Positions 9,051-55,869 of a DNA stretch of 64,000 nucleotides are shown in pieces (positions within the stretch are counted from its first letter, which is position 1; each line of letters starts with the position of its first letter). Source of the stretch: Phyllobates terribilis (taxonomy: Eukaryota); assembly GCF_046119375.1 (NCBI RefSeq), contig NW_027362764.1, positions 394,444,001-394,508,000 on the forward strand. Direction: 5' to 3'. Both the position numbers and the translations under genes were made by a program. A model generated the notes under the pieces. It did no database searches. It saw only the letters and a list, made by a program, of their open reading frames with translations, and was not told the DNA's origin.

Positions 9051-9059
9051 AGGGGGGAA
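9051..9059 (+). promoter_or_regulatory. Polypurine tract
   Basis: AGGGGGGAA immediately precedes the 3' LTR. Confidence 0.85.
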
Positions 9060-24665: not shown

Positions 24666-26569
24666 TTAAGTAGATTGTCGATAGTAAGGTTTGGTCCTCC
24701 GGATTGTGGCATCCCTTTAAATACTTCTTTCCTCTGGATAATATATGAGGGCCTGAACAAGACAGTATCAAATATTATCTACACGTTTTCTAATAGAAAA
24801 TGTCCCTATAGATCTGTATCTGGGATCATTAGATACTCTGTCAGTTACCACATGGTGTCTTCATGAGGTCATGAGGGAATATATACTCTTACAGGCAGAA
24901 TGCTTATACTCCTATGGTAAACTACAATTAAACTTTTAATATCTATGTTAATGAGGCAATTATGATTAATCCAAGTGATTTCAGATGTGAAGATATGTTA
25001 AGTATTGAAGAGTGCTACTGACAAATGTTTGTATTATTATTGTGCACATATTTATAAACGACATAATACATATGTCATGTACAGTATGTGGTTTGTTATT
25101 TACATACTGTATGTATAAATCCTTGTTTTATATCTGTACTACATAGCCACTGGTGTGATGAGTGAGCTATATGCCACATATGGTGTTTTTCCATTGCTAG
25201 GAGTGTGCCGTAGTAATGCTCAGCTTTGCCTTGTGCTGCATTTCTGAACACCTTTCTGACATCTATAAAAGAATGTGATTTAGAGATGTAGAAATCTACA
25301 CCAGATCCATTGCTTTTACTTAAATCCACAAGCCTTTAATGTGAGGATCACATCTCCCCCTGCCATAGAATCCTCCTCTCCAGTAATTGCCTGTCTGCAT
25401 TGTTTGCAGATTGGATTATGACAGGAGTGTGATATCCTGGTACATCACAAGACTTCTTTAAGGAATTCCATTGTTGAAAGAACAAGTGACATGGGAGGAG
25501 TACATGCTGGATACAATATAATAATGATTTTGCTCCCTCTTTTGTTTCAACACTAGAATCAATTGCATCTCCTACTGTCAATTGTGTGTCCTCCCCATCT
25601 ATATCATGCAGTGGCTGCCTTCTTTTTTTTCTATGGCACATAGGCATTGAACAGTTTACAGATCTGGAATTTACTTCTTAGCCTGTTAGTGCCTAGATAA
25701 GAATCTACACATTTAAGCTGCTCAGAAACATTTGTTTCTTTTTTATTTGGTCACATAACTCTCATCACTGGTTCATTTTTCTCACTGTAACTAACGAAGA
25801 TAGAATTGTCCTTTATGGCCATGACATATCAATTACTTTCAGGGAGCAATCCTGTAGTGCTTTCGTGTAAGGTAAAACAAATGTAACTTATCCAAAGCAT
25901 TAAGATATAAGTAGTGTTGATCGAGCACTAAAATGCTCGGGTGCTCGAAGCTCGGGCCGAGCTCGCCGTGATACTCGGGTGCTCGACCCGAGCAACGAGC
26001 CCAATGTTAGTCTATGGGAGACCGGAGCATTTTTGCGGTAGCACCCCCGGCAGTCTTTTAAAAGCCTAACAAGTGCCCAAAACGATAGTGACAGTGCTCA
26101 AATGACATGGGGACAGCATGGGGATCGCCCCAGGAAGCATTTCTGACCCCCAGGTCACTGCTGTCAACAACGTGGTCAGAGGTATTAAGCCACTTTTACG
26201 GGCTCACAATAAAACGTTCAAAAACGAAACTGAAACTTTTTTCCTGTGAAATATGTTAAGGAATTTCTTTTCCAGGGTAAAGACTTGTGTATAAGGTAAA
26301 ATAAATAACCAAAAACAAAAATACTCCTCCACACCTTGGGCTATGTTCACAAGTAGCATTTTTTATGTGTTTTTGCACTTTTGTATTGCTTTCAACTGTG
26401 ACAAATGCATTCACCGGGAAATGTCATTTTAACATTTTACAACCTTATCTGGCCATGTGCTGTGTGACACATGCATAAAGTGCTAAAAAGACATGGGAAC
26501 AGCATGGGGAAAACCCCTGGAAGCATCTCTGACACCCAGGTCACTGTCTAAAAGTGTGCCCATCATAAG

Positions 26570-28000
26570 TGATCCTTGTCGCATCAAAAGATGCAGACTT
26601 GCAACTATCCCCATGCAAGTTCTAGTCCCAGGGCAGTGTTCAATTGTACCTCTCCCATTCCTTGCAATACAAGCGCAAGTATGCAACCTGCCACCCACCC
26701 ACCCCCAGGCTGCAATACTATACTGCTTGCTTGTTTGCACTTGAAATTGGGCCTTTTAGGCAGGTGGAGGCGGAATCTGCCCACCACGTCATGGCTGCGT
26801 TGGCGGCTTGGAATCCATACTCAGTCCCCAGCCGCCCGGCGGCCGGGTGTCCATGCTCGGTCCCCAGCCGCCCCACGGCCGGGTGTCCACACACGGTTCC
26901 CAGCCGCCTGGGGCAGCCGGGTGTCCATAAACGGTCCCCAGCCGCCCCTATTTCTCCTTGGAACATCCCCCCACACACTTTTCTTAGCCTGGCCTGCTTT
27001 AGGGCAGCATTGGATGAGCCCACCAGAGAACCAGACTCCTCCGGTGGGCCCTGGCTTCTCCATCAGGGGAGTTGATAGTGCCAAGATGAGGAGCATGATG
27101 ATGATGACAGAAGTTAGCATCTGCTTTGTTTTCTTTTAATGCAAGTGTAAGTGTGCAGTCTGCCACCCACCCACCCGCAGACTGCAATGCCATACTGCTA
27201 GGTTGCTCTTGAAATGGGGCCTTTTAGTTTGGAGGAGGCCGAAGCTGGCCACTATCTCATGGCTGCTTCGGCAGTGAGGTATTCATACTCAGTCCCCAGC
27301 CACCCCTATTTGTCCTGGTGTGCCTTATACATAAGATTAAGCGCATATACCAAAACATTACCTGTGCCCTCCCCAGTGCATTTAGCGGGAAGGAGAGCCT
27401 ATTCCGCTGTAGTGTGTGCATGCCAAACCCCTGTTCATGGTACATGCGAAGATGCCTCCCACCCTGCACCTGTCATTGCAGACTTGCAACTATCCCCGTG
27501 CAAGTCCTTGTCCCAGGGCAGTGTTCAATTGTACCTCTCCCATTCCTTGCAATGCAAGCGCAAGTATGCAGCCTGCCACCCACCCACCACCAGGCTGCAA
27601 TACTATACTGCTTGCTTGCTTGCACTTTAAATTGGGACTTTTAGGCATGTGGAGGTGGAATCTGGCCACCACGCCATGGCTGCGTCGGCGGACTGGTATC
27701 CATACTCAGTCCCCAGCTGCCCGGTGGCCGGATGTCCCTGCTTGCTCCCCAGCCTCCAGGGGGCGGCTGGGTGTCCATACTCGGTCCCCAGCCACCCCTA
27801 TTTGTCCCGGTAACCTTTCCCACACTTTTCTTAGCCTGGCCTGCTTTAAGGCTGCATTTGCCGAGCCCACCAGAGAACCAGACTCCTCCGGTGGGCCCTG
27901 GCTTCTCCATCAGGGGAGTTGAGAGTGCCAAGGTGAGGAGCATGATGAGGATGATAGAAGTTAACATCTGCTTTGTTTTGTTGGAATGCAAGCGCATGTA
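26570..28000 (+). pseudogene. Tandemly duplicated degenerate hAT transposase fragments, antisense to element A's main ORF
   Basis: Plus-strand SVQLYLSHSLQYKRKYA...LFALEIGPFRQVEAES...YSVPSR matches the main ORF segment SVQLSISQTFERKRKFA...LLALEMLPFRLVETES...YSVPSR. Copies at about 26580, 27130 (partial) and 27380. Confidence 0.85.
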
Positions 28001-28427
28001 TGTAGTAGCGGCTAGGCCTGAGGTGGTCAGCATTTTGGCGCATATCCTACCTCCTCCGAGGATTGCTGGATGCTTTCCTGCTACTATCAAAGTTCTATGA
28101 TTCCCGTTAAAACAAAGCTTCAGGTGATAAATGATGGATGAGGTAGTGGCAAAGGAGAAAGAGCAGGAGGAACAGGGACCATTCACATCAATATCAGGCC
28201 AGTCAACCAGATATGTCTTGTAGGATATGTTTCTGTAACAAAAGGAGTGGTTCGGCTACGCAGTTATAGGACATACAGTGAGTGCAATGCCTACCAAAAA
28301 TTTCGAGGCACTCCAATGCCCCTTGGAAATGACATGGAGGTCAGAGGGCCTTAACTAAACCTTTTTTTCCATTTATAGCAACTGGGTCTCCTGTGCACTG
28401 TTGGCCTAAGCAGTGAATGGAAGGCTT

Positions 28428-28850
28428 TCCAAAAATTTTGAGGAACTGCAATGGCCCTTATAAGAGCCATGCAGTACAGCATATTACAAACATAAGTCCC
28501 ATTATTGGGAAGTGGGTCTCCCATAGGATTTGCTTATGCCTTCCAAGCAAAAGCTTCCAAAAATTAGGACGGAGCAACTTGCAATGCCCCTTACAAGAGC
28601 TATGCAGTACAGCATATTACAAACATAAGTCCCATTATTGGGGAGTGCGTCTCCCATAGGATTTGCTTATGCCTTCCAAGCAAAAGCTTCCAAAAATTAG
28701 GACGGAGCAACTTGCAATACCCCTTACAAGAGCCATGCAGTACAGCATATTACAAACATAAGTCCCATTATTGGGGAGTGGGTCTCCCACAGTCTTTGCT
28801 TATGCCTTCCAAGCAAAAGCTGACAAAAATAAGGACGGAGGAACTTGCAA
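28428..28850. repeat. 133-bp tandem repeat, ~3 copies, downstream of the transposase stop
   Basis: GCAGTACAGCATATTACAAAC recurs at 28471, 28604 and 28737. Confidence 0.9.
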
Positions 28851-28998
28851 TGCTGGCACGCTGGTGGTATAGTGGTGGTGGAGGCTGAGGATAAGGAGAA
28901 GAACATAAAACAGCCGAAATGAGGAAGCATATACCCATGTGTGGGTGTGAAGCGGTGCATGTGAATACACCTCCCGAAATAACACAGTGGATTTGACT

Positions 28999-31900
28999 TT
29001 ATGTTACTCTGCTGTCATTTGGTGGTGATGAGAAGTCTGGCCCAATCCAGCCCTTGTTCATTTTGATAAGGGTCAGCTTGTCAGCATTGTCAGTTGACAG
29101 GCGAGTGCGCTTATCAGTTATAATTCCCCCAGCGGCACTAAAAACACGCTCTGATAACACGCTAGCGGCAGGGCAGGCCAGGACCTCCAAGGCGTACAGA
29201 GCGAGTTCATTCCAAGTGTCCAGCTTGGATACCCAATAATTAAAAGGCACAGAGGAATCAAGGAGGACGCTGGTATGGTCGGCAAGGTACTCCCTCACCA
29301 TCTTTTGAAACTTTCCACTCCTTGTGAGAGTACCCCGCGCCTCAGGGCCTGTAAGCTGGGCGGGTGTCAGAAATCTGTCCCAGAATGTTGACAGTGTTCC
29401 CCTGCCTCTGCTGGATTGGAGTTGCATCTCTCTCGCCTGTACGCCTTGGTTGGGCAGCGAACTGTGACCTCTGCCGCTAGCGTGTTCAGATGGGAAATTT
29501 TAAGAGTTCTGCAGCAAGGGCCTTCTGGTACTGCCCCATTTTTGTAGACCTCTCCACCTCAGGAATAAGAGAGTGAAAGTTCTCCTTGCAGCGGTGGTCT
29601 AAAGGTGTCACCAACCAGTAATGACTGTCACCCAACATTTTGACAACGCGAGGGTCACGGTTAAGGCAGCGTAACATAAAGTCAGCCATGCGTGCCAGAC
29701 TGGTAACGGGCAAGATTTCCGTGTCCTCACCAAGATGACGACTGACCATGCTCTCCTCCTCCTCCTCCTCCCCCCTGTCCCCAGGCCACCCACGCTGAAC
29801 CGACGGTATGACACTTGAACAGGTACTACCATCTACAGCGCATGATAGCAGCTCCTGTTCTTCCTCCTCCTCCTCCTCGCCATCCTCTCCCTCATTGTCC
29901 CCCAATGCACATTGGGATGAGATGAGGCTGGGCTGCGTGTAATCGCCCACTATGGCTTCTTGATCCATCTCATCATACTCTGGCTGCAATGCCTCCTCTT
30001 TAATTCTCTGCAGAGAGCGTTGCAAAAGACAGACAAGTGGGATGCTGACACTAATGATGGCGTCATCGCCACTCACCATCTTGGTGGCTTCCTCAAAGTT
30101 TGTCAGGATGGTACACATGTCAGACATGTGTGGAGTCTGACCTGAATATTGATGGCCTTGTTGCATCTGGTACTCCACAACTGCTCTCTTCTGCTCACAA
30201 ATCCTTTGCAACATGTGGAGGGTAGAGTTCCAACGTGTGGGGACATCACACACCAGTCGGTGTGCCGGAAGCTGCAAACGCTGCTGCAACACAGCAAGGG
30301 CGGCGTAAGCTGTAGCCGACTTGCGAAAATGAGCTGACAGGCAGAGTACTTTCACGAGCAGATCTGGGAACTCGGGGTACGATTTAAGAAACTGCTGAAC
30401 CACGAGGTTAAACACATGAGCCAGGCATGGTACGTGTGTGATCTCACCTCGCCTCAGAGCCGCCACCAGGTTACTGCCATTGTCACACACGACCATGCCG
30501 GGATGTAGGTTCAGCGGTCTCAGCCACAGATCTGCCTGCTCTATCACAGCTGTCCACAACTCACAAGCAGTGTGAGGTTTATCACCTAAGCTTATGAGTT
30601 TCAGCACAGCCTGTTGCAGTGCTTCCAGCTTGTAACTGATGTGGTGATATCTGAGATGGAGGCTGAACATGAGGAGGAGGAGGAGGATGATGCACAGGAG
30701 CTATACACTGTGGGGGCAACTATGACTGACATAGGGCCCGCAATCCTCGGTGTGGGGAGGACGTGTTCCGTCCCAAGGTCCGACTGGGTCCCGGCTTCCA
30801 CTATGTTTACCCAGTGTGCCGTCAGAGAGATGTACTGTCCCTGGCCACAAGCACTTGTCCACGTGTCCGTTGTCAGGTGGACTCTCCCAGTAACTGCGTT
30901 GTTGAGGGCACGGCAGATGCTTTGGGACACGTGCTTGTGTAGTACGGGGATGGCACACCGGGCAAAATAGTGTCGGCTGGGGACCGAGTACCGAGGGACG
31001 GCCACCGCCATAAGATTGCGGAAGGATTCCGTCTCCACCAGCCTAAAAGGCAGCATTTCCAACGCAAGCAGTCGTGAAATGTGCGAATTTAGGACTGTGG
31101 CCTGTGGGGCGTTAGCTGCGAATTTCCGCTTTCGTTCAAAGGTCTGGGATATGGACAATTGAACGCTGCGGTGGGACGTGGATGTGGACGTTGATGCTGT
31201 TTCTTGAGAAACTGCCATAACAAATGAAGAGTGAGGAGGGTGCATCTTTACATGCAGTATGGACAGGGGATTGCCTTGCACACACAACACGGGGTTCTAT
31301 TGCACGCACAACAGTGGAAGAAGGAGTGGTGACACCCACTGACACTGGTCGTGGACCCTGGGTTTCGCCCCACAAAGTCGGGTGCTTTGCTGCCATGTGC
31401 CTGATCATGCTGGTGGTGGTCAGGCTGGTAGTTTTGTCACCCCTGCTGATGCTGGCATGGCAGGTGGAACATATGGCCTTTTTGGGGTTATCAGCAGAGT
31501 CTTTAAAAAAATTCCAGACTCTGGAAGACCTACCGCTTGTACTGGCAATGTCCCTCGTGTTGGTGTTACGGGGAACGGTTGCCCACCTTCTGTCTGCGGC
31601 CACCACACTGCTTCTTCCTGCCTGTTGGGGTACTCTGCCTCCCTCCCCCTGGGTGCTGCTGGCCTCACTCTGCATGTCCTCCTGCCATGTTGGGTCAGTT
31701 ACTAGATCATCCACCACCTCCTCCTCTTCCACTTGCGCACCACGATGCTCCTCCTCACTTCCTGACAATTGTGTCTCGTCATCGTCCACCTCTTGTGACA
31801 AATTGCCAGCGTCGACTTCCTGTGGCCGTGGCTGTTCAAATATTTGGGCATCTCTACATGGGATCTCCTCTTCCACCACTTCAAGCGTATCAGGCGAGGG

Positions 31901-32311
31901 GCACAAATATGGAAATGGACCAGTGAACAGCTCTTCAGAGTGTCCAAGTGTGGGATCAATTTCTGTCTGACGACAATCGGCATGGTGGGAGGAAGGAGCA
32001 TCAGGGTGAGGAGGAGTATGCGGTCGAGACTCACGGCTACTAAGAGTTGACCGTGTGGAAGACAGACCGGAGGTGGTGGTGCCCAGGTAACTGGAAGTAT
32101 TATCTGCTATCCAATTAATAACCTGTTCACACTGATCAGTTCTCAATACTGGTGTTGTTCTGTGCTTCCCTAGTAATTCGGTGAAGAAGTGGGAGCGAGA
32201 AGATGTGGCTGTTGGTTGTGGCGAATTTTCACCTTGGCCACGGCCCCGTCCTCTGCACGAACAATCACCAGAACGTCCACTTCCACGTCCCTTGCCACGC
32301 GCCTTGCCCAT
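28999..32311 (-). pseudogene. hAT (ZBED-like) transposase of element A, frameshifted into four ORF pieces
   Basis: BED finger (VWNFF..C..C..RHMAAKH), TTDTWTS, CDNGSN, CLAHVFNL, DVPTRWNS and the dimerisation motif CPAASVLSERVFSAAG. ORFs 31136-32311, 30601-31290, 29486-30670 and 28999-29427. Confidence 0.92.
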
Positions 32312-32379
32312 TGTAAAGGAAGTAAAATAGCTTACACTTGCACTATCAATGGAAAAAGGGTAATAAAAAGTAGATTAGA

Positions 32380-34250
32380 ACCGTGGAAGAGGAAAACCAC
32401 AGTTCCATTTCTCTGGCCTACACCCGACTCTTTTAAACAATCTGAACAATCAGGGAGAAACTATTACTGTTTTTCTTTACGTAAAAAATAACAAAACCTG
32501 AATAATAGAGGTTTTTTACCGTGGGATGGCAAAACCACAATTATTGTTTACTGGGGTATACCAGACTTTTTTAAATATATAGATTTGCGGCTGAACAGTG
32601 AGCGACACACTCAAACTGGTTTTTTTTTAGATACCAAAGGCCTAAAACTGGATAGTGCAGAGATTTGACCCGTGGAACTGCAAAACCACATTGGGATTTG
32701 TCGAGCCTACACCAGACTATTTTCAACAGATATATTTTTGTGTCACAACAGTCAGGAGACACTACTGTTTTTCTTTACGGAAAATATACCAAAATCTGAA
32801 TAATAGAGATTTTTTACCGTGGGATGGCAAAACCACAGTTATTGTTTACTGGAGTATACCAGACTTTTTTAAATATATAGATTTGCGGATGAACAGTGAG
32901 CGACACACTCAAACTGAGGTTTTTTAGATACCAAAGGCCCAAAACTGGATAGTACAGAGATTTGACCCGTGGAACTGCAAAACCACACTGGGATTTGTCG
33001 GGCCTACACCAGACTATTTTAAACAGATATATTTTTGTGTCACAACAGTCAGGAGACACTACTGTTTTTCTTTACGGAAAATATACCAAAACCTGAATAA
33101 TAGAGATTTTTTACCGTGGGGTGGCAAAATCATAGTTATTGTTTTCTGGGGCATACCAGACTTTTTTAAATATATAGATTTGCGGCTGAACAGTGAGCGA
33201 CACACTCAAACTGTTTTTTTTTTAGATACCAAAGGCCCAAAACTGGATAGTACAGAGATTTGACCCGTGGAACTGCAAAACCACACTGGGATTTGTCGAG
33301 CCTACACCAGACTATTTTCAACAGATATATTTTTGTGTCACAACAGTCAGGAGACACTACTGTTTTTCTTTATGGAAAATATACCAAAACCTGAATAATA
33401 GAGATTTTTTACCGTGGGATGGCAAAACCACAGTTATTGTTTACTGGAGTATACCAGACTTTTTTAAATATATAGATTTGCGGATGAACAGTGAGCGACA
33501 CACTCATACTGAGTTTTTTTAGATACCAAAGGCCCAAAACTGGATAGTACAGAGATTTGACCCGTGAAACTGCAAAACCACACTGGGATTTGTCGAGCCT
33601 ACACCAGACTATTTTCAACAGATATATTTTTGTGTCACAACAGTCAGGAGACACTACTGTTTTTCTTTACGGAAAATATACCAAAACCTGAATAATAGAG
33701 ATGTTTTACCGTGGGATGGCAAAACCACAGTTATTGTTTACTGGGGTATACCAGACTTTTTTAAATATATAGATTTGCGGCTGAACAGTGAGCAACACAC
33801 TCAAACTGTTTTTTTTTTAGATACCAAAGGCACAAAACTGGATAGTACAGAGATTTGACCCGTGGAACTGCAAAACCACACTGGGATTTGTCGAGCCTAC
33901 ACCAGACTATTTTCAACAGATATATTTTTGTGTCACAACAGTCAGGAGACACTACTGTTTTTCTTTACGGAAAATATACCAAAACGTGAATAATAGAGAT
34001 TTTTTACCGTGGGATGGCAAAACCACAGTTATTGTTTACTGGGGTATACCAGACTTTTTTAAATAGATATATTTGCGGCTGAACAGTGAGCGACACACTC
34101 AAACTGTTTTTTTTTAGATACAAATGGCCCAAAAGTGGATAATACAGAGGTTTGAACCGTGGAAGTGCAAAACAACACTTCTGTTTCTCTAGCCTACACC
34201 TGACTATTTTCAACAGATATATTTGTGTCTGAAAAATCAGAGACACGCTT
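32380..34250. repeat. Satellite array inside hAT-A: 297/298-bp units forming a 595-bp higher-order repeat
   Basis: GTCAGGAGAC at 32751, 33048, 33346, 33643 and 33941. Alternating variants (GCGGCTGAAC / GCGGATGAAC). ORF-track copies recur every 595 bp. Confidence 0.93.
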
Positions 34251-35554
34251 TTTTATTTTGGGGGGGGTGCACCAAAAGGTTAATAAGACGGGTATTTGTA
34301 CAGTGTGAAGGAGGATAAAAAAAAGAGGATTTAGATGAAAAAAAAAAAGGATTTTTCCTGTCCCCTGAGACCTGGAGCTAAGTCCAGCAATTTCAGCAAC
34401 AGGAGCAGCACACAGGACTGTAATGCAGCGTTTGCTGGTATTACCACTGCGTCTCCTATACAGCCTGCCTGTCTGATATCTGGGAAGGATATTAGTCCTA
34501 AGTAGGACTGTTTGTTTGATCTGGCAGCCTTTACAGACCCTACACTAACTATTTTGCAGTTTATATCTCTCCCTAAATCAGCAGCGCTGTCCCTACACTG
34601 TCTGATCCGGAGCGACTGTGTCCAAGATGGCGGCGCCCAGATTTAAATACTAGAGGTGATGCTGTGAGGCCAGATAATCACTGTAATGCCCATAACCAAC
34701 ATGGCTGCGGCATTACAGTGACTGGCTGGCAATCCCTGCATGTTCATTGGCTCTGTAAAGAGCGCCAAACATGCAGGGCGGAGACCCGAGCTCCCGCCCG
34801 AGTAGCGTGATGCTCAGGCGAGTACTGAGCAGTGTCGAGCATGTTCGCTCAACACTAGATATAAGTATTGAACTAATAATTAGAGATGAGCGGTGTTCGA
34901 CTCGAACTGTTCGCCAATCTCAAATTTGAGCTGTTTTGGGCGGTGTTCGAGCCGTTCGACGAACTGGAACGATTTGCAAAAAATCCGGCTGTTCGAGGTT
35001 ATGTTCGATAACTGTTCGTGCACCAAAATTGTAGCTGGATTTTTTCACAGTAATACTGTTAATCAATGTTACTAGACAGTTTCAGTGTAGAGTGGGTGGG
35101 GGAGGGGCAGGGGATGGATCTCTGCAGAAATAATGCCGATCTCCATTTTTTTTTCTTTCCTGCATTTACAGTGGGGAGGTGCAGTCTTTCAGGCTATCAG
35201 CAGCGCACACACAGAGCTAAGTGCTTTTTTTCACACAAGCAAGGGCATGTGTCATTGGCTGTGTATGTCACATGTCCTTGCCCTATAAGACCCAGCCATT
35301 TTCCCCATCGCCACCATTTTCTCACTGCTGCAGCTGAGTGTTAGACGGCACAGCTGCTGCTGTGGGAGCTATACTTTGTAACTGTGTGAATTGCAAGCGA
35401 ATTTGCTCTTAAATAGACAGGTTTAGGGACTAGGGATTTGTTGTAATTTCAGCCCTTTTGAGGGCTAGGTTACAGCAGTTCCTAGCACTTTTTGCCAGGC
35501 AGGTCTGTGCCAATGCTGTGCAAGTGTTTTTCACAGAATTTGGCTAAATCTAGC

Positions 35555-35950
35555 TAAGTCAATCCTTTTGGGCCTCTAGCAGTGTGTGTTAGTCTGTGGA
35601 GTAGCCTATCTGTGTTGCAAGCTACACCACCTGTCTATCTAATACCAATTTTTTTCTGCATATAGCCAAGTAAAACCTTTTGGGCATATTAGCAGTGTCT
35701 GTTACTCATTGGAGTAGCCCATCTGTACCAAGCTACACCACCTTTGTATTTAATAAATTTTTTTTACTGCATCTAGTCCAGTAAATCCTTTTGGGCCTGT
35801 AGCTGTGTCTGTTACTCATTGCAGTAGCCCATCTGTAATAAGCTACACCACCTCTGTATTTAATAACAATTCTTTACTGCATCTAGCCAATTAAAACCTT
35901 TTGGGCCTGTAGCAGTGTCTGTTACTCATTAGAGTAGCCCATCTGTACGG
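35555..35950. repeat. ~110-bp tandem repeat in hAT-B, about 4 units
   Basis: CCTTTTGGGC...AGCAGTGTCTGTTACTCATT...GTAGCCCATCTGTA recurs at about 35565, 35677, 35786 and 35898. One inverted unit at 38153-38243. Confidence 0.85.
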
Positions 35951-35989
35951 ATATGCAGCGATACTAAATAACCAATGGTGCACAAGCTT

Positions 35990-37245: not shown

Positions 37246-37276
37246 GTTATTCTAACGTGGTTTGTTTCTTCTACAG

Positions 37277-43866: not shown

Positions 43867-43901
<35 letters not shown>

Positions 43902-45531: not shown

Positions 45532-45543
45532 TATATATATATA

Positions 45544-47121
45544 CACTACCATTCAAAAGCTTGGGGTCATTTAGAAATGTCATTATTTTTTAAAGAAAAG
45601 CACAATTTTTTTCAGTGAAGTTAACATTAAATGAATCAGAAATACACTCTATTCATTGTTAATGTGGTAAATGACTATTCTAGCTGCAAACATCTTGTTT
45701 TTATTACAATATCTACATATGTGTATAGAGGCCCATTTCCAACAACCACCACTCCAGTGTTTTAATGGTACATTGTGTTTGCTAACTGTGTAAGAAGGCT
45801 AATGGATGTTTAGAAAACCCTAGAAAACCCTTGCACAAGTATGTTAGCCCAGCTGAAAACGGTTTGGCTGATTTAAGAAGCTATAAAATTGACCTTCCTT
45901 GAGGAAGTTGAGAATCTGGAGCATTACTTTTGTTTGTTCTATGAAACTCTCAAAATGGCCGACAGTCTATTCTTGTTCTTAAAAATGAAGGCGAGAGATT
46001 GCCAAGAAACTGAAGATTTCCTACAACGGTGTGTACTACTCCCTTCAGAGGAGAGCACAAACAGGCTCTAACCAGAGTAGAAAAAGAAGTGGGAGGCCCT
46101 GCTACACAACTGAGCAACAAGACAAGTACATTAGAGTCTCTAGTTTGAGAAATCGACGCCTCACAGCTCCTCAACTGGCAGCTTCATTAAATAGTACACC
46201 AAAACGCCAGTGTCAACGTCTACAGTGAAGAGGCGACTCCGGGATTCTGGCCTTCAGGGCAAAATGGCAAAGAAAAAGCCATATCTGAGACTGGCTAATA
46301 AAAGGAAAAGATTAATATGGGCAAAAGAACACAGACATTGGACAGAGGAAGATTGGTAAAAAGTTTTATGGACAGACGAATCAAAGTTTGAGGTGTTTGG
46401 ATCACACAAAAGAACATTTGTGAGACGCAGAATAACTGAAAAGTTGCTGGAAGAGTGCCTGACTCCATCTGTCAAGCATGGTGGAGGTAATGTGATGGTC
46501 TGGGGTTGCTTTGGTGCTGGTAAAGTGGGAGATCTGTACAAGGTAAATGGGATTTTGAATAAGGAAAGCTATCACTCCATTTTGCAACACCATGCCATAC
46601 CCTGTGGACAGCTCTTGATTGGAGCCAATTTCATCCTACAACAGGACAATGACCCACAGCACACCTCCAAATTATGCATAAACTATTTAGGGAAGAAGCA
46701 GGCAGCTGGTATTCTATCTGTAATTGAGTGGCCAGCGCAGTCACCAGATCTCAACCCCATTGAGCTGTTATGGGAGCAGCTTGACCGTATGGTACGCAAA
46801 AAGTGCCCATCAAGCCAATCCAACTTGTGGGAGGGGCTTTAGGAAGCATGGGGTGAAATTTCTCAAGATTACCTCAGCAAATTAACAGCTAGAATGCCAA
46901 AGGTCTGCAACACTGTAATTGCTGCAAAGGGAGCATTCTTTGACGAAAGCAAAGTTCGAAGGAGAAAATTATTCTTTCAAATAAAAATCATTATTTCTAA
47001 CCTTGTCAAGGTCTGGACTATATTTTCTATTCATTTTGCAACTCATTTGATAAATAAAAGTATGAGTTTTCATGGAAAACACAAAATTGTCTGGGTGACC
47101 CCAAAATGTTGAATGGTAGTG
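45544..47121 (+). mobile_element. Second DD38E Tc1-like transposon, degraded
   Basis: TIRs CACTACCATTCAAAAGCTTGGGGTCA / TGACCCCAAAATGTTGAATGGTAGTG. Transposase remnants at about 45955-46960 (WTDESKF, QQDNDPQH, SPDLNPIE; 38-residue spacing) with stops and frameshifts. Confidence 0.9.
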
Positions 47122-47505
47122 TGTGTGTGTGTAAATATATATATATATTCAGTATATATATCCATCTTAGCTAACAGTCCTTCTGAGGACTAATACAGCT
47201 GCATATAATCAGTGCTAGGTAGGCAGGCAGTGTATGTGGCAGACTGCAGTTTATGATACAGCACAATAGGGTATATTGAATGTCCTGTCTGCTGCTGCTG
47301 TAATAATTACAGATATTTGTAGACATAGCCCCAGATATCAGGGGCCCGGGCAAATTTTTTTTTATCTTAATCCTGTTATTTGCTTAAAAAGCAATCCAGA
47401 GTACACCATTTTTCTGCTCCATTTGCTTGTTCCAGATCTGTTCCATATTTCAGCGATAAAAATACAGAAATTTAAACTGAACGTGGAAAATATTGGCCTC
47501 CTTTT

Positions 47506-48250
47506 CCATTCTGTTGCAGTGTGTCGGTCAAGCTATTCACACTAGGTGTCTGTGAAGAATAGTATTAGTAAATTACAGGCCTGCTATTTAAAACCGTGGT
47601 TCTCTGTCAGACATATCACCTATAAGACTGTTCCAAAATCAGACATTTCTTCCATTTCCATTCTGTTGCAGTGTGTCGGTCAAGTTATTCACAGTAGGTG
47701 TCTGTGAAGAATAGTATTTGTAAATTACAGGCCTGCTATTTAAAACAAAGGTTCTCTGTCAGACATGTCACCTATAAGAGTGTTCCACAATCAGCCATTT
47801 CTTCCATTTCCATTCTGTTGCAGTGTGTCGGTCAAGCTATTCACACTAGGTGTCTGTGAAGAATAGTATTAGTAAATTACAGGCCTGCTATTTAAAACCG
47901 TGGTTCTCTGTCAGACATATCACCTATAAGACTGTTCCAAAATCAGACGTTTCTTCCATTTCCATTCTGTTGCAGTGTGTCGGTCAAGTTATTCACAGTA
48001 GGTGTCTGTGAAGAATAGTATTTGTAAATTACAGGCCTGCTATTTAAAACAAAGGTTCTCTGTCAGACATGTCACCTATAAGAGTGTTCCACAATCAGCC
48101 ATTTCTTCCATTTCCATTCTGTTGCAGTGTGTCGGTCAAGCTATTCACACTAGGTCTCTGTGTAGAATAATATTATTAAATTACAGGCCTGCTAATTAAA
48201 ACCATGGTTCTCTTTCAGATGTATCACATATAACTGTGGTTCAAATCCAG
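47506..48250. repeat. Satellite in hAT-C: 152-bp monomers in alternating A/B form (304-bp dimer)
   Basis: CCATTCTGTTGCAGTGTGTCGGTCAAG at 47506, 47658, 47810, 47962 and 48114. Diagnostic variants CTATTCACACTAGG / TTATTCACAGTAGG alternate. Confidence 0.93.
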
Positions 48251-49319
48251 CCATTTGTAGTGAATGTGGAAAATATTGTCCTCTATTTATAGATTGGAGC
48301 AGTGTGTCAGTGTATACCATTTTACAGCTCCATTTGCTTGTCCACAGAATACAGCCAGATTTTTTTAGTTCTATTCATATTACAGTATAGTGGAAGCAGA
48401 GGAACTTTTTTCAATGATCAGACGCACGTGATCCATATGACTGCCATAATAATACAGAAATTTTGTGGAGTGTGCCAAATATTCCACTCCTTTTAAAGTC
48501 AGCCACCTGTGTTTTGTTGAACCAATTGACACCTGGTCGCTGACAAATACCATACCATTAGGCGACTGCCTGAAACCGTGGCCATCAGATGTTATCCCAT
48601 ATGACTGCCCTAATAATCCAGCAATTATTGTGAGCGTGTCAAATGTTACACTCCATTTAAAGTATTGCAGTTGAGGGTTCAAACCTATTCTCGGTTTGCC
48701 GCATATCTGTGAACAATGTTGTCAGAGTATTACGCCACTTCTGCGGACTGACAAAAAAAAACATAAAAAAAAAGCTAAAATGGAAAAAATGTTAAGAAAC
48801 ATTCTTTCCAGGGTAATGACTTGTATATAAGGCCAAAGAAATAAAAAGGAATAAAGTTATGGACTGTGGAAGACATTCATGCGAGCAGAATGAACACTCA
48901 TGTGTAGCTGGTGATGATACCACCTAGCAGCAGCACCTGTTCCAATTGTAAATGCATCTGACAGCATTATCAATAGGTAATAGAATTGATTTTAAATTTT
49001 TTTTGGCAGCACCAGCAGCACGCAGTATAAGGCAATAATTCCTGGCTGGATCGGTGTATCCATACTTCGATACCTCACCCGTAAAAAAATTTCAGATAAG
49101 ACAGTTAGTATTCTAGAACATAGAATCTATTTGAATTGTCCTTCCCATTATTAAGGAGTGTGTCTCCTATACTGTTATTGCATATGCAACAATTTCAAGG
49201 TCTGCCAAAAATTAGGACGCACTCCAATGCACATTTGAAGAGACGTAAAAAAAAATAAAAACACCGTAGGATCTTTCTTTAGAATAAAATAACAGACTTG
49301 CCAATGTAACCTCAATGTA

Positions 49320-49590
49320 ACCACATTGTTCAGCTTCTGCACCTCCTCCTCCAGTTCAGCCTCCATCTCCAAAATGACCACATCAGTCACAAGCTGGAAG
49401 CACTGCAACACTACCTTGGCCAAGGGGCAACAGGCTGTGCTGAAGATAATATGCTTAATGCTTAGGTGACAAACTGGCCACCGCTGCAGAGTTGTTGAAA
49501 GCTGTAACACAGCAGCCTGATCTGTGGCTCTCACCACTGAACATACAGCAAGGCATGGTCATGTGTGACAATGGGCGGAACCTGGTGGCA
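49320..49590 (+). pseudogene. Short sense-orientation remnant of hAT-C transposase
   Basis: Plus strand reads ..TTSVTSWKHCN..GMVMCDNGRNLVA, matching hAT-A transposase around 30440-30680. Confidence 0.7.
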
Positions 49591-49930
49591 GAGAAATGAC
49601 AACTGAAGTAGATACAGTTTCCCTCTATGCCAGTACTTTCACCGAGCTAAAGAATATAGCTGTGGTGAAATACAACTCTCACCGAGAAGCAGTGTCAGAG
49701 TGAGAAACATTGAGTCCACCACAGGATTTGATTCTGAGGGCCCACCTTTCTCCCCCGCTCAAGAGCCCCATAGCTGCTGCAAAGTTTGCGCTATTATGAA
49801 CTCTGCTGATGGAGAAGCCAGGTCCCACCCGAGGATTCTCTGGTGGGCCTGTAAAACCCTCCTGAGAAGCAGCCCTGGCTAGGAAAAGTGTGTGGGAAAG
49901 TTCCTGGACACTCTATGGCTGCTTTTTTAC

Positions 49931-50060
49931 TGAGGGGAAAACCCACGCAAGCGCGGGTAGAACATATAAAATCCTTGCAGATGTTGTCTTTGGTGGGATT
50001 TGAACCCAGGACCCCAGCGCTGCAAGGCTTCAGTGCTAACCACTGAGCCACTGTGCTGCC
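49931..50060 (-). mobile_element. V-SINE 5' portion (tRNA-derived head)
   Basis: Minus strand GGCAGCACAGTGGCTCAGTGGTTAGCAC...GGTTCAAATCCC...TGCGTGGGTTTTCC, with A and B boxes. Confidence 0.85.
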
Positions 50061-52239
50061 ATCTCTGTTCTCCCTCTGATATCTAACATGCTGGAGAAAC
50101 TTGCACCTACTGCCACTCAGTATCTTCAGCTCCTTTGTGAGAAAGTAATGTATTTGAGCAGCCACTCAGTCTACCAAATAATGGTAATAAGTGGATGGCT
50201 TCGCTACTGGTACTGGGTGCCAACACCAAACCATTGGAAATATTCCAGACTGGTTGGAGCCAAGCTGATTCCCACAAGAAAGTACCAGCAGCAAGCTAAG
50301 GAGATGGTGGCCTCTATCATCATCACGACCTCACCTCGGCACTATGAAATCTCCTGATGGAGAAGCCAGAGCCCACTGGAGGAGTCTCCAGTTTTCAGGT
50401 GGGCCCGTCCAACCCTGCCGAGAAGCAGCCCTGGCTAAGAAAAGTGTGTGGGAAGGTTCCTGGACGCTTTATGGCTGCTTTTTTTTTTCCTTTTACTGTG
50501 GACTGGCTCCGCACTGTCCCTAGCCACATTCACCTGTTCACGTGTTTGTGGTTAGGCAGTCCTTCTCAGTAAGTGCACTGGGGAGGACACGGGTAATATT
50601 CTGGGACCCGCGCTTGTGGAAGGCAGAGACAACACTGGGAGAAATAGTGGTGGCTGTGGACCGAGTATGGACACCCGGCCACCGCCGGCATGAATTTGTG
50701 AAAAGCTTCCACCTCCCCGAGCCTAAAAGGCAACATTTCAAGTGCAAGCAGTCCAGAAATGTGTCAGTTTAATATTGCGGCCTGTAGGTGGGTGGGTGGC
50801 TGGCTGCATACTTGCGCTTGCATTCCAAGTGACACAAAGCTAAGGAGATGAATGATTCAACCATCATGAATAATTTGGTTGTTGTCTAGAAGACCGAGCA
50901 CAATATTAACCCAGTCACATGTGTCAGTGAGATGTACCATCCCTGGCCACATTCACTTGTCCACGTGTTTGTGGTTAGGCAGTCCTTCCCACTTAAGTGC
51001 ACTGGGAAGGTCACGGGTAATGTTCTGGGACTCACGTTTGTGGAAGGCAGAGATGATACTGGGAGAAATAGTGGCGGCTGGGGACCAAGTATGAACACTC
51101 GTCCGCCGCCATGAGGTTGTAAAAAGCTTCTGCCTTCGCGAGCCTAAAAGGTAGCATTTTAAGTGCAAGCAGTCCAGAAATGTGTCAGTTTAGTATTGCG
51201 ACTTGTGAGTGGGTGGCTGGCTGGCTGCATACTTGCACTTGCACTCCAAGGACTGTGGTAGGGACAACTGAACGCTGCAAAGGGACAAGGACGTGGACGA
51301 TGATAGTTGCAAGTCTGCAATGACAGGTGCAGTGCAGGAGGCATCTTTGCATGTGCCATGGACAGGGGATTGGCATGTACACACAACAACGGAATAGGCA
51401 GTGGTGTCACCCGCAGACACTGTTTCTGGACCTTGGTGTTCGGTCCAGCTAGTCAGGTGCTTTGCTGCCATGTGCCTGAGCATGCTGTTGGTGGTCCGGC
51501 TGGTAGTTTTGGTGCTCTTGCTGATGCTGGCCTGGCAGATGTTGCAAATAGCCTTTTGGGGTTATCTAAACAGTCTTTAAAAAAGAACCAGACTTGGGAA
51601 GACCAAACAGTTGTTCGGGCAACGTCCGTCGTGTTGGTGTTCCGTGGAGCATTTGCCCGCCTTGTGTCTGTGGCCACCACATTGCTTGTTCCTCCCTGTT
51701 GTGGTGCTATGCCTCCCTCCCCCTGTGTGCTGCTGTCCTCACTCTACATGTCCCCTTGCCAGGTTGGGTTAGTGACTTGTTTTCCACTTCCGCACCCTGG
51801 TCCTCCTCCTGACTTTCTGTCCATTGTGTCTCATCATTATCCACCTCTTGCGACAGTATTTGCACTTTACCACCATCACCTTCGGATGACCATGGCTCCA
51901 CAAATCGCTACATATGATTTTCTGTTGCCCTGCTCGAAGCTGGCCGGTCGAGAGGCCCAAATTTATCGATGGAAAAGTGAACAGCTCTTGGGGTAACCCA
52001 GGACTCTAATCTCGCCTTCAAACTACAAATCCAAGCTCTTTCCACTTCCGAGCTGACCAAGCGAGAGGCCAGGATCTATAAATGGAAAGATGAACAAAAC
52101 AGCTCTTTGAAGTGTCCAAGTCTGGGATAAGTTGTCTCGAGGCACTCGGAATGGTGGGAGGAAGGAGTATCAGGGTAAGGAAGATGCCAACTCCAAGTAA
52201 AAAAAAATCTCCTGCATCCGCACATTCCTCAACCACGAA

Positions 52240-52955
52240 TCTACAAAAACACTAATGCGCTCATCATCTCCCTTCTCGACATCTGCAATGTCCTGCTCTG
52301 TGGCCTCCCTTCTAACACTCTCTCGCATTCCTCCTCTATCCTAAACTCTGCTGCCCAACTAATCTACCTGTCCCCTCGCTATTCCCTGTCCTCTCCTCTC
52401 TGTCAATCCCTTCACTGGCTCCCCATTACCCAGAGACTCCAGTTCAAGACCCTAACCTTGGAAGGCAAAGCTATCCACCACTTGTCTCCTCCATACATCT
52501 GTGACCTAGTCTCCCAGTAGTTACCTGCACACAACCTCCGATCCTCACAAGATCTCCTTCTCTTCTCCTCTCTTATCTCCTCGCATACAAGATTTCTCCC
52601 GTGCATCCCCCCTTCTCTGGAACTCTCTACCCAACCATTTCTGACTCTCACCTACTGTTGAAACCTTTAAAAGGAAGCTGAAGACCCACCTCTTCTGACA
52701 TGCGTAAAACCTGCAGTAACCCTCGCTTTACTATACCTCTGGAAGACCTTCTCTATCCTCACCTAGTGTGTCCTCACCCATGCCTTGTAGACTGTGAGAC
52801 CTCGTGGGCAGGGTCTCTCCCCTCTCCTGTACCAGTCACTGTCACATTTTTGTCACATTTTTGCTCAAGATTATTGTAATTGTTTTTGCAATGTATTCCC
52901 CTTTTTCACATATAAAGTGCAATGGAATAAATGGCGTTAAAGTAATAATAATAAT
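52240..52955 (+). mobile_element. L2-clade LINE 3' fragment
   Basis: LIISLLDICNVLLCGLP...LCQSLHWLPITQRLQFKTL, a 3' UTR and an (AAT)n tail. Transposase remnant resumes on both sides. Confidence 0.85.
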
Positions 52956-53123
52956 GTGAGCCAGACTCACATCTACTGAGACTGGACCATGTGGAACACA
53001 GGGTGGTGGTGGTGGCGGCAAACTGACTGGAAACTTTATCTGCTATCCAACCAACAACCTTTTCACACTGCTCTGGCAACAATAGTGGTGTTCTGCGGCC
53101 CCCTAGAAATTGGGACATGAAGG

Positions 53124-53355
53124 TAGTTTGACATGAGCAAATTTGTTTGGCATTTCAAATTCAGGTTTGTGTTCGGGGTTCCGGCTTGTCGTGGCAAAAA
53201 ATCGGCTCCACCCACGAACATCCCTAATTTGCTAAGCTGTCACGCAGATGCCAAAATATCGGCTTTGCCCACGAACATCCCTGATTTGCCACGCTGTCAC
53301 GCAGATGTTAACACGAACACGAATTTGAAATGCTGAACAAATTCTCTCAACACTA
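53124..53355. mobile_element. Small hAT-type TIR pair nested in hAT-C
   Basis: TAGTTTGACATGAGCAAATTTG..GCATTTCAAATTC / GAATTTGAAATGC..AAATTCTCTCAACACTA; two ~52-bp internal repeats; no matching TSD. Confidence 0.5.
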
Positions 53356-55869
53356 ACCATCACCATAATCTCCACTTCCCCATCTCTTGACACACACCTT
53401 GCCCATTTTAAATGGGGTTTAAGATTTGTCACGTTGCCAAAAATGTCTGTATTATTACCGCAGTAATATAGGATCACGTCTGATGAAATGACCACAGTTT
53501 TAGGCAGTGCCCTGGGAGTCAGAGATGCTTCCAGGGGTCTTTCCCATGCTGTTCCCATGTCACAAACCACATGGCCAGAAAAGGTTGTAAAATGTTAAAA
53601 TGACATTTCCCGGTGAATGCATTTGTCTTGGTTCAAAGCACTGCAAAAGTGCAAAACCGCATCAAAAATGCTACGTGTGAACATAGCCCAAGGTGTGGAG
53701 GAGCATTTTTGTTTTTGGTTATTTATTTTGACTTATATACAAGTTATTACCCTGGAAAGGATGTTCCTTAACATATTTCCCAGGAAAATCCATTTTGGTT
53801 TAGTTTTTGTATGTTTTATTATGAGCCCCTAAAAGTGGCGTAATACCACTGACAACATTGTTGACAGCAGTGACCTGGGAGTCATAATTGCTTCCAGGGG
53901 TGTTCCCCATGCTGTTCCCATGCCATTTGAGCATCGATTTAGGCAATTTTTAGGCCCTCTGCAGACAGCTGGGGAGGGTGGGGGCACCAGAAAAATGCTC
54001 GAGTTTCCCATAGACTTACATTGGGCTCGTTACTCGGACCAAGCACTCGAGCATTCAAATTTGCTTGACCCAAGCAACGAGTACCCGAGCATTTTCGTGC
54101 TTGATCATCACTAATAATAATGAATAGTTTTAAAACACACAAGCAGTAGTTAAGTAAAAATAGAAATCCCCTTTATTATTAGAAAAGATAAACAGATTTA
54201 ATCAGATGTATTATCAATGAATATTGTTGACCTCAGACATTATTAGACTTATTTAAAAACTATTACAAAAGATTTTTTAAACAGTGATACCCCAATACTG
54301 ACACCAGAGCGAGGGGTCAAGCGGTTTAAACTTTCTGGTAATTGATTCATATTTTCAACCTCTGCTCTATTTGTTGTTTTTGAGACAGTCAAAAATAGCC
54401 AGGCGTTGTGCTATGATTTATCTAGCAGTCCAACAGACAATAAATAGAGCTCCTTCACTATATTCAAGACAGAATTCTGGATCATCCCATTTTGGGATCA
54501 CTGCACAGTCTCATGCAGGAGTGCTGAGCAAGTAATTTCCTTTCTCTCATGTTCGATCTCCACTCCTTTTGTTGCCGAGGAAAATGCTTGGCTATTTTTG
54601 GCCGTCGAATAGATAATAAATAGAGCTGAGGTTGAGAATCTTCACTTCTTTCAATACAAGCTCTGTAGAGCTTGGTTCTCCGGTTCCTGAGCCTTGTTCT
54701 TTGAATTACTTGGATTGCTTGAGGTCCACAGGGATCATTATCCCTTATCCTAAGGACCAAAAAGTGTTTGCTCTTAGATGGTGAGCTTTGGAGGAAGTCA
54801 ATGGTAACCATAAGGAGCAACTTAAAGTGAAATTCCTGCAATGGCAGACATATTGGACTTTGTTAAATTTTTATTCTTTGAAATTGGTGAGCAAAAGAAC
54901 TCACTAAAATAACAAATATTGTTATTTTAATGCCTATATAAAACTGTAAAATATACTAACTATTATGTTGATCGTTCCTTGTAGGAAAATACAGAGGACA
55001 TTTATTACTGATAAAGCATCTATCACAGATGGATTGTGTAGTATGAGTAATTGGTACAACATAATCTTAACCTTTTGAGACATTTCTTTGATATTCTGTC
55101 CTGAGTTTGCCTGATGATTGTTATTGTGTCTTTTTGTTTGTTGTTGTTTTTTTTGTTGCTTTTTATACTTTTTATAAAATATGGATAAAGGATAACTTAA
55201 TATTGCAAACCTTTTAAAATGAATTCACTGATGTTAGCCACATTTTCTATGGATTACATGTTTGCTTTGTTAAAAATATTTTACTATTTCTTGGCAATTT
55301 TTAAACATAATCTTTCACACTACACAAAAATACAAAATACCACAAAAACAAAAGTATTTACAAGTAAGTATGTAAAGGATGCCAAAGTATGTCCCCACGC
55401 ACCGTCTGAGCATCTTGTGCAACAACTTGTAAAGGGTTGGCCATAGTAAACAGCAACAGCACACTCTTGCCCTGACAGGGTAGCTAGGCAAGCTATGATG
55501 GCAATTTCCCTGGGTGCAGGAGATGGTGTCATTGTCACAATAGGTGTAGTGTTTAATGCCATTTCATGGGTGTTCATATGAGATGTCTGAGAGCTTTTAA
55601 GTTGACACTGAGAAGGAGTAGGCTTTGTCTTTTCTGTTGAAAAGCCATCAATAGGATGATATCTAAGTAATATCTTTTCATGGGTCACCTGAAGTTTTGA
55701 CAGGATCCCCAAGTTGGAGGAGTGTCAGAGTAAAGAAGTGGGGAAAACCTGAGTATCATGAAGAAGAGGCAATCAGTGAATTAGCTAAGGAAAGTATCCC
55801 GTGTATTGGTTGGCTTTATGAATCTATCAGCACTGCAGAAGGTCAACTGTAAGAGAATACAGAGAAAAT

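What the first reader, a model, noticed from the sequence alone, without database searches (positions are those of the whole stretch)
25904..54121. Three different 8-11 kb hAT elements inserted side by side into one 26-bp target
Each element has its own perfect 8-bp TSD: A GATATAAG, B CTAATAAT, C ATAATAAT. They are separated by only 23 bp (34858-34880) and 11 bp (43310-43320). Removing them reconstructs GATATAAG-TATTGAA-CTAATAATAAT, in which the B and C targets overlap. They are not nested and not tandem duplicates: A and C are diverged members of one family in opposite orientation, and B has different ends. Three independent insertions in 26 bp suggest targeting next to existing element ends, for example BED-domain transposase bound to resident subterminal repeats capturing incoming transpososomes, or an extreme hotspot. 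Such end-adjacent stacking would build TE arrays without destroying residents. The mechanism is inference.
Basis: partly seen in the sequence, partly recalled or inferred. Interest (0 to 1): 0.8.

Follow-up and report, generated by a model that had tools for sequence, protein, structure and literature searches.

The report
Three stacked frog hAT transposons
Three large cut-and-paste (hAT) transposons from two related families landed independently within 26 bases of AT-rich frog DNA; the stack is real, but it looks like an extreme case of the known re-use of favoured target sites, not proof of a new mechanism that seeks out element ends.

Summary
Element A (25912-34857), B (34881-43309) and C (43321-54113) each end in TAG(A/T)G(A/T)TGA inverted repeats. 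Each is flanked by its own perfect 8-bp duplication. The spacers are 23 and 11 bp, and the B and C targets overlap by 5 bp. A and B carry decayed BED/hAT transposase genes that are 39% identical. C is an inverted, gutted relative of A. Public contigs support both inner junctions. The A/B junction words are missing from one individual that does have the B/C junction, so A may be a recent, polymorphic insertion.

All three targets match a Tol2-like TTATAA core in 5 of 6 positions. The 26-bp patch is in the top 0.16% of the window for such sites. At roughly 4e-5 hAT copies per bp, pairs within 25 bp are expected by chance. A triple is not: about 0.002-0.006 expected in the roughly 49 Mb this scan has read.

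The best reading is independent insertions into a fine-scale hotspot. This extends the "double insertion" known for P and hobo. Capture by resident ends remains possible but is unshown. The scan noted similar hAT stacks elsewhere in this genome (s1-224807, s1-198969, s1-198982, s1-238356).

The parts
25904..25911 (.). Left copy of A's target-site duplication, GATATAAG
   Evidence: identical to 34858-34865
25912..34857 (-). Element A, an 8946-bp hAT element. The strand given is that of its transposase gene.
   Evidence: Inverted tips 14/16. zf-BED in ORF 31136-32311(-) and hAT dimerisation domain in ORF 28999-29427(-).
29014..31759 (-). A's transposase gene, decayed. It aligns to residues about 50-967 of frog ZBED4-like transposases, in four pieces with frame changes.
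   Evidence: tblastn
26570..28000 (+). Family-intrinsic antisense copy of part of the transposase gene in A. The equivalent in C is at 50626-51549(-).
   Evidence: tblastn hit at 26626-26835(+); repeats D5/D12/D16
32465..34228 (.). Satellite cargo in A: 298-bp unit x 5.9. A second array (133 bp x 3.1) lies at 28440-28853.
34858..34865 (.). Right copy of A's duplication, GATATAAG
34866..34872 (.). 7 bp of host DNA (TATTGAA) between the A and B targets
34873..34880 (.). Left copy of B's duplication, CTAATAAT
34881..43309 (-). Element B, an 8429-bp hAT element of a second family, with GTTCGA subterminal repeats
   Evidence: The terminus at 43309 is confirmed by other genomic copies and by the copy ending at 1993.
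38543..41255 (-). B's transposase gene. Residues 236-965 align in one frame, but with an in-frame stop between ORFs 38525-40261 and 40301-41056. The BED part is in another frame.
43310..43317 (.). Right copy of B's duplication, CTAATAAT
43313..43320 (.). Left copy of C's duplication, ATAATAAT. It overlaps B's right copy by 5 bp.
43321..54113 (+). Element C, a 10793-bp non-autonomous member of the A family, inverted relative to A
   Evidence: End homology to A is inverted. Only residues about 396-471 of the transposase remain, at 49371-49590(+).
43902..45531 (+). Tc1/mariner element nested in C inside a (TA)n tract. It has long inverted arms (284-nt repeat pair, 94% complementary) and a 324-aa ORF.
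   Evidence: (I1)
54114..54121 (.). Right copy of C's duplication, ATAATAAT

Best explanation
Three separate cut-and-paste integrations, by two related and very abundant hAT families, hit one small AT-rich patch of single-copy host DNA. The patch carries three in-register near-consensus hAT target sites (ATAA at duplication positions 4-7, TTATAA-like core).

Each integration made the usual 8-bp staggered cut. This copied the target and left it, or the neighbouring sites, available for the next element. B and C re-used the (TAA)n-like site CTAATAATAAT with a 3-bp shift. A took the next site, 7 bp away, and probably arrived last.

This extends to three elements and two families the 'double insertion at a preferred site' described for P and hobo. 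What is shown: independence of the events, the termini, the target motif and the abundance of the families. What is inferred: that the clustering comes from a fine-scale hotspot in the target DNA or its chromatin, and not from the resident elements.
For: - Each element has its own perfect duplication and inverted tips.
- A and C are 8-23% diverged and structurally different, so neither is a copy of the other.
- All three duplications score 5/6 against the Tol2 target core TTATAA (PMC2753552). So do the flank of an independent B-family end at 1993 (GTCATAAC) and the left flank of the small element at 58599-58802 (CTCATAAG). Only 0.96% of positions in the 35.8 kb of host sequence do so.
- The patch holds 3 such sites in 26 bp. 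Only 0.16% of window positions reach that, and with 4 sites in the slightly longer stretch it is the densest cluster in the window.
- B's end and C's start are massively repeated in reads. Summed word depth is 1e5-1e6, against 14 for the unique junction contig, and a third of laid contigs are at least 99% alike. The families are therefore abundant and recently active.
- McGurk and Barbash 2018 (PMC5932611) show that P, hobo and other elements form dimers by repeated insertion at preferred sites, and that the duplication regenerates the site.
- Stacking here crosses families. That fits a property of the target better than a family-specific protein tether.
Against: - Motif preference alone does not raise the chance of insertions at different neighbouring sites. 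It only does so if good sites cluster, and the measured clustering factor is about 1.6.
- With about 4.2e-5 hAT copies per bp (265,361 copies in 6.36 Gb of Dendrobates tinctorius, PMC11152451; 2 per 36 kb in this window), a triple within 25-bp gaps is expected about 0.3-0.8 times per genome, or 0.002-0.006 times in the roughly 49 Mb scanned. An extra fine-scale heterogeneity must therefore be assumed, and it was not measured.
- Other 5/6 sites 13-80 bp to the right are unoccupied.
- The motif rests on five duplications, three of them from the stack itself. The choice of core and threshold was made after seeing the data.
- Earlier scan notes suggest large-with-large hAT stacks recur more often than any simple null predicts.
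Confidence: 0.5

Rival explanations
1. Resident-end-assisted capture, a generalised form of the reader's idea. A transpososome carrying an excised hAT element has spare DNA-binding sites. These bind the tip or subterminal repeats of a resident hAT element, so integration happens a few bases outside that end. The near-identical tips across families would allow cross-family capture.
For: - The later of B and C integrated with its 8-bp target only 3 bp from a resident tip. The later of A and B integrated 15 bp from a tip, so the target footprint overlapped resident end sequence.
- The tips are 11/12 identical between B and C's left end. The subterminal hexamers differ by one base, GCTCGA versus GTTCGA.
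- Hermes transposase is an octamer that uses only three BED domains on its left end (PMC10368747), so spare domains are plausible.
- If A is the newest insertion, it landed beside B's repeat-rich left end.
- The triple is about 200-400 times rarer than one event in the scanned DNA under simple nulls.
- Unverified scan notes report four more hAT stacks in about 770 windows, several between different families.
Against: - No direct evidence exists; this is n = 1 here.
- The transposases are only 39% identical.
- The repeat-rich ends of A and C point away from the junctions.
- All three targets are good motif sites in the best patch of the window, which an end-tether does not require.
- The other hAT ends in the window, at 1993 and 58599, have no hAT neighbour. 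The end at 58802 abuts a non-hAT repeat.
Confidence: 0.28
2. Pure coincidence in a transposon-saturated genome. There is no hotspot and no end effect. With hundreds of thousands of hAT copies, some triples must exist, and the scan selects oddities.
For: Pairs within 25 bp are expected about 2-6 times in the scanned 49 Mb even under uniform insertion. Genome-wide, 0.3-0.8 triples are expected, rising to about 20-36 if the density is 2e-4 per bp.
Against: The expected count in the scanned fraction is 0.002-0.006. All three elements are large (8-11 kb) members of a rarer size class. The targets are in register on the same motif.
Confidence: 0.15
3. Assembly artefact: repeat-induced mis-joins of three elements that lie at different loci.
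For: The ends are extremely repetitive. The outer junctions were not checked with reads. The two samples holding the A/B junction may include the assembly's own source.
Against: The A/B junction 31-mers are present 5/5 in runs of two samples from two studies. The B/C junction is in a zero-mismatch contig from a third sample at low, single-copy-like depth. Matching duplications on both sides of every element would not arise from mis-joins.
Confidence: 0.04
4. One composite event or rearrangement: a macrotransposon bounded by the outer ends of A and C, nesting, or ectopic recombination between copies.
For: A and C form a large imperfect inverted repeat around B.
Against: The outer flanks GATATAAG and ATAATAAT do not match, so the block did not move as a unit. 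No element interrupts another. Recombination between copies would break the matched duplications. The junction is low copy, not a repeated composite.
Confidence: 0.03

Closest known systems
Double insertion of transposable elements at one target (McGurk and Barbash 2018, Genome Res, PMC5932611): P-element, hobo and other dimers in Drosophila
   Same: Independent insertions land at a preferred target. The target duplication lies between the elements. The site is regenerated by the duplication. Dimers form at sites that fit the preferred motif well and during bursts of activity. hobo is a hAT element.
   Different: That work describes two copies of one family in exactly the same 8 bp, mostly head-to-tail. 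Here there are three elements of two families, with three distinct targets (two overlapping by 5 bp, one 7 bp away), in a vertebrate, and the elements are 8-11 kb.
Local transposition and preferred sites of P and hobo. A hobo preferential site in the dpp heldout region (Newfeld and Takaesu 1999) is cited in PMC5913719. The double P elements are from my own knowledge and were not read here.
   Same: A second element of a cut-and-paste family sits within bases of a resident one.
   Different: Local hops copy the resident element. Here A and C are 8-23% diverged and B is another family, so no element is the donor of another.
Tol2 target preference (Kondrychyn et al. 2009, PMC2753552)
   Same: A vertebrate hAT element with 8-bp duplication, AT-rich targets and a weak palindromic core (C/G)TTATAA(G/C). 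The five duplications seen here each match that core in 5/6 positions.
   Different: Tol2 showed no bp-scale clustering in 338 events. Tol2 is a 4.7-kb element of another hAT lineage (the size is from my knowledge).
Hermes transpososome (Lannes et al. 2023, PMC10368747)
   Same: A BED zinc-finger transposase that recognises subterminal repeats, with the nTnnnnAn target preference.
   Different: No target capture by resident ends is described for Hermes. Whether the frog transposases form octamers is unknown.

Membership tests
hAT superfamily DNA transposon (each of A, B, C) | 8-bp target-site duplication | tested here: met
   Perfect 8/8 for all three elements
hAT superfamily DNA transposon (each of A, B, C) | Short terminal inverted repeats starting YARNG (the consensus is from my knowledge) | tested here: met
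   TAGTG / TAGAG tips, 10-11 of the first 12 bases matching between the two ends
hAT superfamily DNA transposon (each of A, B, C) | Transposase with BED zinc finger and C-terminal hAT dimerisation domain | tested here: met
   A: PF02892 and PF05699. B: PF02892 and PF05699. Both genes are broken by frame changes or stops. C keeps only a roughly 75-residue remnant and is assigned through its ends.
hAT superfamily DNA transposon (each of A, B, C) | Ac-type target pattern nTnnnnAn | tested here: met
   B and C fit fully. A has A at position 7 but A instead of T at position 2.
Same-site double insertion (TE dimer in the sense of McGurk and Barbash) | Elements separated by exactly one copy of the shared target duplication | tested here: not met
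   The spacers are 11 bp (two overlapping duplications) and 23 bp (two duplications plus 7 bp). It works like a double insertion but is not the strict same-site form.
Same-site double insertion (TE dimer in the sense of McGurk and Barbash) | Targets fit the family's preferred motif | tested here: met
   5/6 to the TTATAA core for all three targets, against a 0.96% background. The sample is small and the threshold was chosen after seeing the data.
Local hop of a resident element (double P / hobo type) | The neighbouring elements are copies of one another | tested here: not met
   A versus C is 77-92% identical at the ends with different internal structure. B is another family.
Nested insertion | One element interrupts the body of another | tested here: not met
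   All six tips are intact and host DNA lies between the elements. Only the Tc1 element in C is nested.
Composite or macrotransposon | Matching duplication at the outer borders of the whole block | tested here: not met
   GATATAAG versus ATAATAAT
   The frog genome DNA could not be fetched. Only this window and unverified scan notes were available.

The most novel reading that the evidence does not exclude
In this poison-frog-like genome, hAT transpososomes are captured by the tips of resident hAT elements, even across families that share the TAG(A/T)G(A/T)TGAGC tip. New copies therefore integrate 0-15 bp outside existing ends and build arrays of giant elements without destroying residents. 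The process would be ongoing, because element A appears to be absent from one sequenced individual.
Probability: 0.25. Interest if true: 0.65.

Novelty: new member of a known kind. Interest (0 to 1): 0.4.

Why it matters
If stacking only reflects site preference, this is a clean vertebrate example of how active DNA transposons pile up at favoured sites. It shows the pile-up with three elements, two families and overlapping targets. Such pile-ups create large inverted repeats (here about 28 kb) that can destabilise a locus or seed satellites.

If resident ends really attract newcomers, that would be a new targeting rule for hAT elements. It would bear on how giant amphibian genomes grow and on the integration profiles of hAT-based vectors such as Tol2.

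The possible presence/absence polymorphism of A gives a direct handle on the order and timing of the insertions.

Tried and rejected
- **Apparent inversion inside C.** Its A-like coding segment is direct while its ends are inverted. tblastn resolved this: the family carries a built-in antisense copy of the 5' part of its transposase gene. C has lost most of the true gene, so C is simply an inverted, deleted A-family member.
- **Other copies from related frog genomes.** I tried to fetch them through the look-up of encoding contigs to test stacking on independent loci. No DNA was served because the files are too large.
- **De novo scan for inverted tip plus 8-bp duplication.** It was too noisy to count other hAT families. 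The only perfect-duplication TAG-tipped hits were A, B and C.
- **Hairpin or cruciform at the empty target.** The fold energy is -1.1 kcal/mol with z = +0.75, so no structure.
- **nTnnnnAn density as the explanation.** The patch is only at the 7th percentile.
- **Literature.** A search for 'double P element' gave only surgical papers. Newfeld and Takaesu 1999 is not held.
- **Reads.** Only one stretch could be laid, so only the B/C junction was examined at contig level. The A/B junction was tested only through indexed 31-mers, and the outer junctions were not tested at all.
- **Other readings.** The macrotransposon, nesting and ectopic-recombination readings were rejected on the duplications.
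Full report
**What is there**

- Element A spans 25912-34857 (8946 bp). It is flanked by GATATAAG on both sides.
- Seven host bases (TATTGAA) follow.
- Element B spans 34881-43309 (8429 bp). It is flanked by CTAATAAT.
- Three more bases (AAT) complete ATAATAAT, the duplication that flanks element C at 43321-54113 (10793 bp).
- The inner gaps are 23 and 11 bp, and the B and C duplications overlap by 5 bp.
- Removing the elements restores GATATAAG-TATTGAA-CTAATAATAAT. This lies in single-copy flanks of 35-36% GC, against 44% for the window.

**Are the borders real element ends?**

Yes, on three independent lines.
- A and C are related in inverted orientation, and their homology stops exactly at the tips on both sides.
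- A truncated B-family copy elsewhere in the window ends at the same base as B (1993).
- In public read contigs, the many other genomic copies of B lose homology at 43309 (joints from 43309).

Three perfect 8-bp duplications beside TAG(A/T)G tips cannot be chance.

**What the elements are**

- A carries a BED zinc finger and a hAT dimerisation domain on the minus strand. Its gene aligns to residues about 50-967 of frog ZBED4-like transposases, but in four pieces with frame changes.
- B carries the same two domains. Residues 236-965 align in one frame, but with an in-frame stop, and the BED part is in another frame.
- The A and B proteins are 39% identical, so these are two families.
- C looked internally inverted at first. 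An earlier scan note (s1-204982) and tblastn show that the A family carries an antisense copy of the 5' part of its own transposase gene near one end.
- C keeps that antisense segment (50626-51549) but only about 75 residues of the true gene (49371-49590). C is therefore an inverted, non-autonomous A-family member.
- C is padded with a nested Tc1/mariner element (43902-45531), a second Tc1 fragment and a 152-bp array. A and B also carry satellite arrays.
- All three elements fit the hAT definition: 8-bp duplication, YARNG tips, and BED plus hATC transposase.
- B's ends are not entirely different from A's and C's. Its first 12 bases match C's left tip in 11 of 12 positions, and the subterminal hexamers differ by one base (GTTCGA versus GCTCGR).

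**Organism and abundance**

- The best protein matches are dendrobatid frogs: Anomaloglossus at 71%, and Ranitomeya imitator fragments at 87-89%.
- B's right end and C's left end are enormously repeated in reads. Summed word depth is 1e5-1e6, against 14 for the unique junction contig. About a third of the laid contigs are at least 99% alike.
- These families are therefore abundant and recently active.
- A common B derivative lacks about 823 bp (joint 42212 to 43036).

**Is the assembly right?**

- All five sampled 31-mers across the A/B junction (34830-34910) occur in every listed run of samples S1 and S2.
- A 78-nt contig from sample S3 (run X4, depth 14, no mismatch) covers 43287-43364. That is 23 nt of B's end, the 11-bp spacer and 44 nt of C. 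It has more than 31 letters on both sides of the spacer/C border but only 23 on the B side.
- The low depth shows the junction is single copy and not a repeated composite.
- The same sample S3 shows none of the five A/B junction words in two runs.
- Since S3 has the B/C junction at good depth, A is either absent from that individual or the junction differs there. This is a lead that A is the youngest, still polymorphic insertion.

**Is it more than chance?**

- A related species has 265,361 annotated hAT copies in 6.36 Gb, or 4.2e-5 per bp (PMC11152451). This window outside the stack has 2 in 36 kb.
- Under uniform insertion, the roughly 49 Mb this scan has read in this genome should hold about 2 pairs within 25 bp but only about 0.002 triples. 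That is about 0.3 triples per genome.
- All three duplications share ATAA at positions 4-7. So do the flank of the independent B-family end (GTCATAAC) and the left flank of the small element at 58599-58802 (CTCATAAG).
- All five match the Tol2 target core TTATAA in 5 of 6 positions (PMC2753552). Only 0.96% of host positions do so.
- The 26-bp patch holds three such sites, which is the top 0.16% of window positions. It is the densest cluster in the window.
- By the generic nTnnnnAn pattern the patch is unremarkable, at the 7th percentile.
- A site motif multiplies re-use of the same site about 100-fold. It raises hits at different neighbouring sites only through clustering of good sites, measured here at about 1.6-fold.
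- The motif model therefore still predicts only 0.004-0.006 triples in the scanned DNA, or 0.2-0.3 if the density were 2e-4 per bp.
- Pairs need no special mechanism. The triple needs either luck at the 1-in-200 level or extra fine-scale clustering.

**Mechanism**

The shown steps are three independent staggered-cut integrations. No element is the donor of another.
- The later of B and C integrated 3 bp from a resident tip.
- The later of A and B integrated 15 bp from a resident tip.

The cause of the clustering is inferred. I favour a fine-scale hotspot in the target (confidence 0.5), for four reasons.
- The targets are in-register motif sites in the best patch of the window.
- The stack crosses families with 39% identical transposases and different subterminal repeats.
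- The repeat-rich ends of A and C face away from the junctions.
- The same logic, site preference plus regeneration of the site by the duplication, explains the P and hobo dimers of Drosophila (PMC5932611).

Capture by resident ends (0.28) stays open, for four reasons.
- The tips are nearly identical across families.
- The Hermes octamer leaves BED domains unused (PMC10368747).
- If A came last, it landed beside B's repeat-rich end.
- Earlier scan notes list further hAT stacks in this genome: s1-224807 (confirmed by a follow-up agent), s1-198969, s1-198982, s1-238356 and s1-237641. If those stacks involve only large elements, their number would exceed simple nulls. These notes are unverified and readers notice palindromes preferentially, so I use them only as a lead.

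The remaining rivals are pure chance (0.15), mis-assembly (0.04) and a composite or rearranged origin (0.03). A hairpin at the empty site is excluded.

**Comparison and verdict**

- The stack works like the double insertions of P and hobo, but it is not the strict same-site homodimer. It has three elements, two families and offset targets.
- It is not a local hop, not nested and not a macrotransposon. The membership tests give the details.
- I class it as a new member of a known kind and score interest at 0.4.
It should be run against motif-matched and density-matched nulls. It could not be run here because frog genome DNA was not obtainable.

Noticed in passing
window 34830-34910 (A/B junction) in sample S3: All five indexed junction 31-mers are missing from two runs of an individual that does carry the B/C junction at depth 14. 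Element A may be a presence/absence polymorphism.
   Followed up: partly
window 26570-28000 and 50626-51549: The A/C family carries an antisense copy of the 5' part of its own transposase gene near one end. C's copy (residues about 152-357) is longer than A's (about 239-306).
   Followed up: partly
window 42212-43036: In all four read sets many B-family copies join 42212 to about 43036. A deletion derivative lacking about 823 bp is therefore common in the genome.
   Followed up: no
window 43309 joined to 43519 or 43714 in read contigs: Contigs from other loci join a B-family right tip to positions about 200 and 400 bp inside a C-family left end. This hints that B-family copies also insert into C-family subterminal regions elsewhere.
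   Followed up: no
window 43902-45531 and 46393-46842: A Tc1/mariner element with long inverted arms (284-nt repeat pair) and a 324-aa ORF sits in a (TA)n tract inside C. A second Tc1-type DDE fragment lies 900 bp further on.
   Followed up: partly
window 58599-58802 and 58804-58945 / 59868-60009: A 204-bp hAT-tipped miniature element (imperfect duplication CTCATAAG / CTCATGAA) abuts the start of a 142-nt repeat. A second copy of that repeat, 94% identical, lies 1 kb downstream.
   Followed up: partly
window 2195-3162 and 9059-10026: A 968-bp direct repeat, 99.4% identical and 6.9 kb apart, probably marks a young LTR retrotransposon. It starts 200 bp from the truncated B-family end at 1993.
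   Followed up: no
window 32465-34228, 28440-28853, 35548-35948, 47499-48233: Each of the three hAT elements carries its own tandem array (298, 133, 110 and 152-bp units). This is in line with scan notes of satellite-carrying giant hATs in this genome.
   Followed up: no
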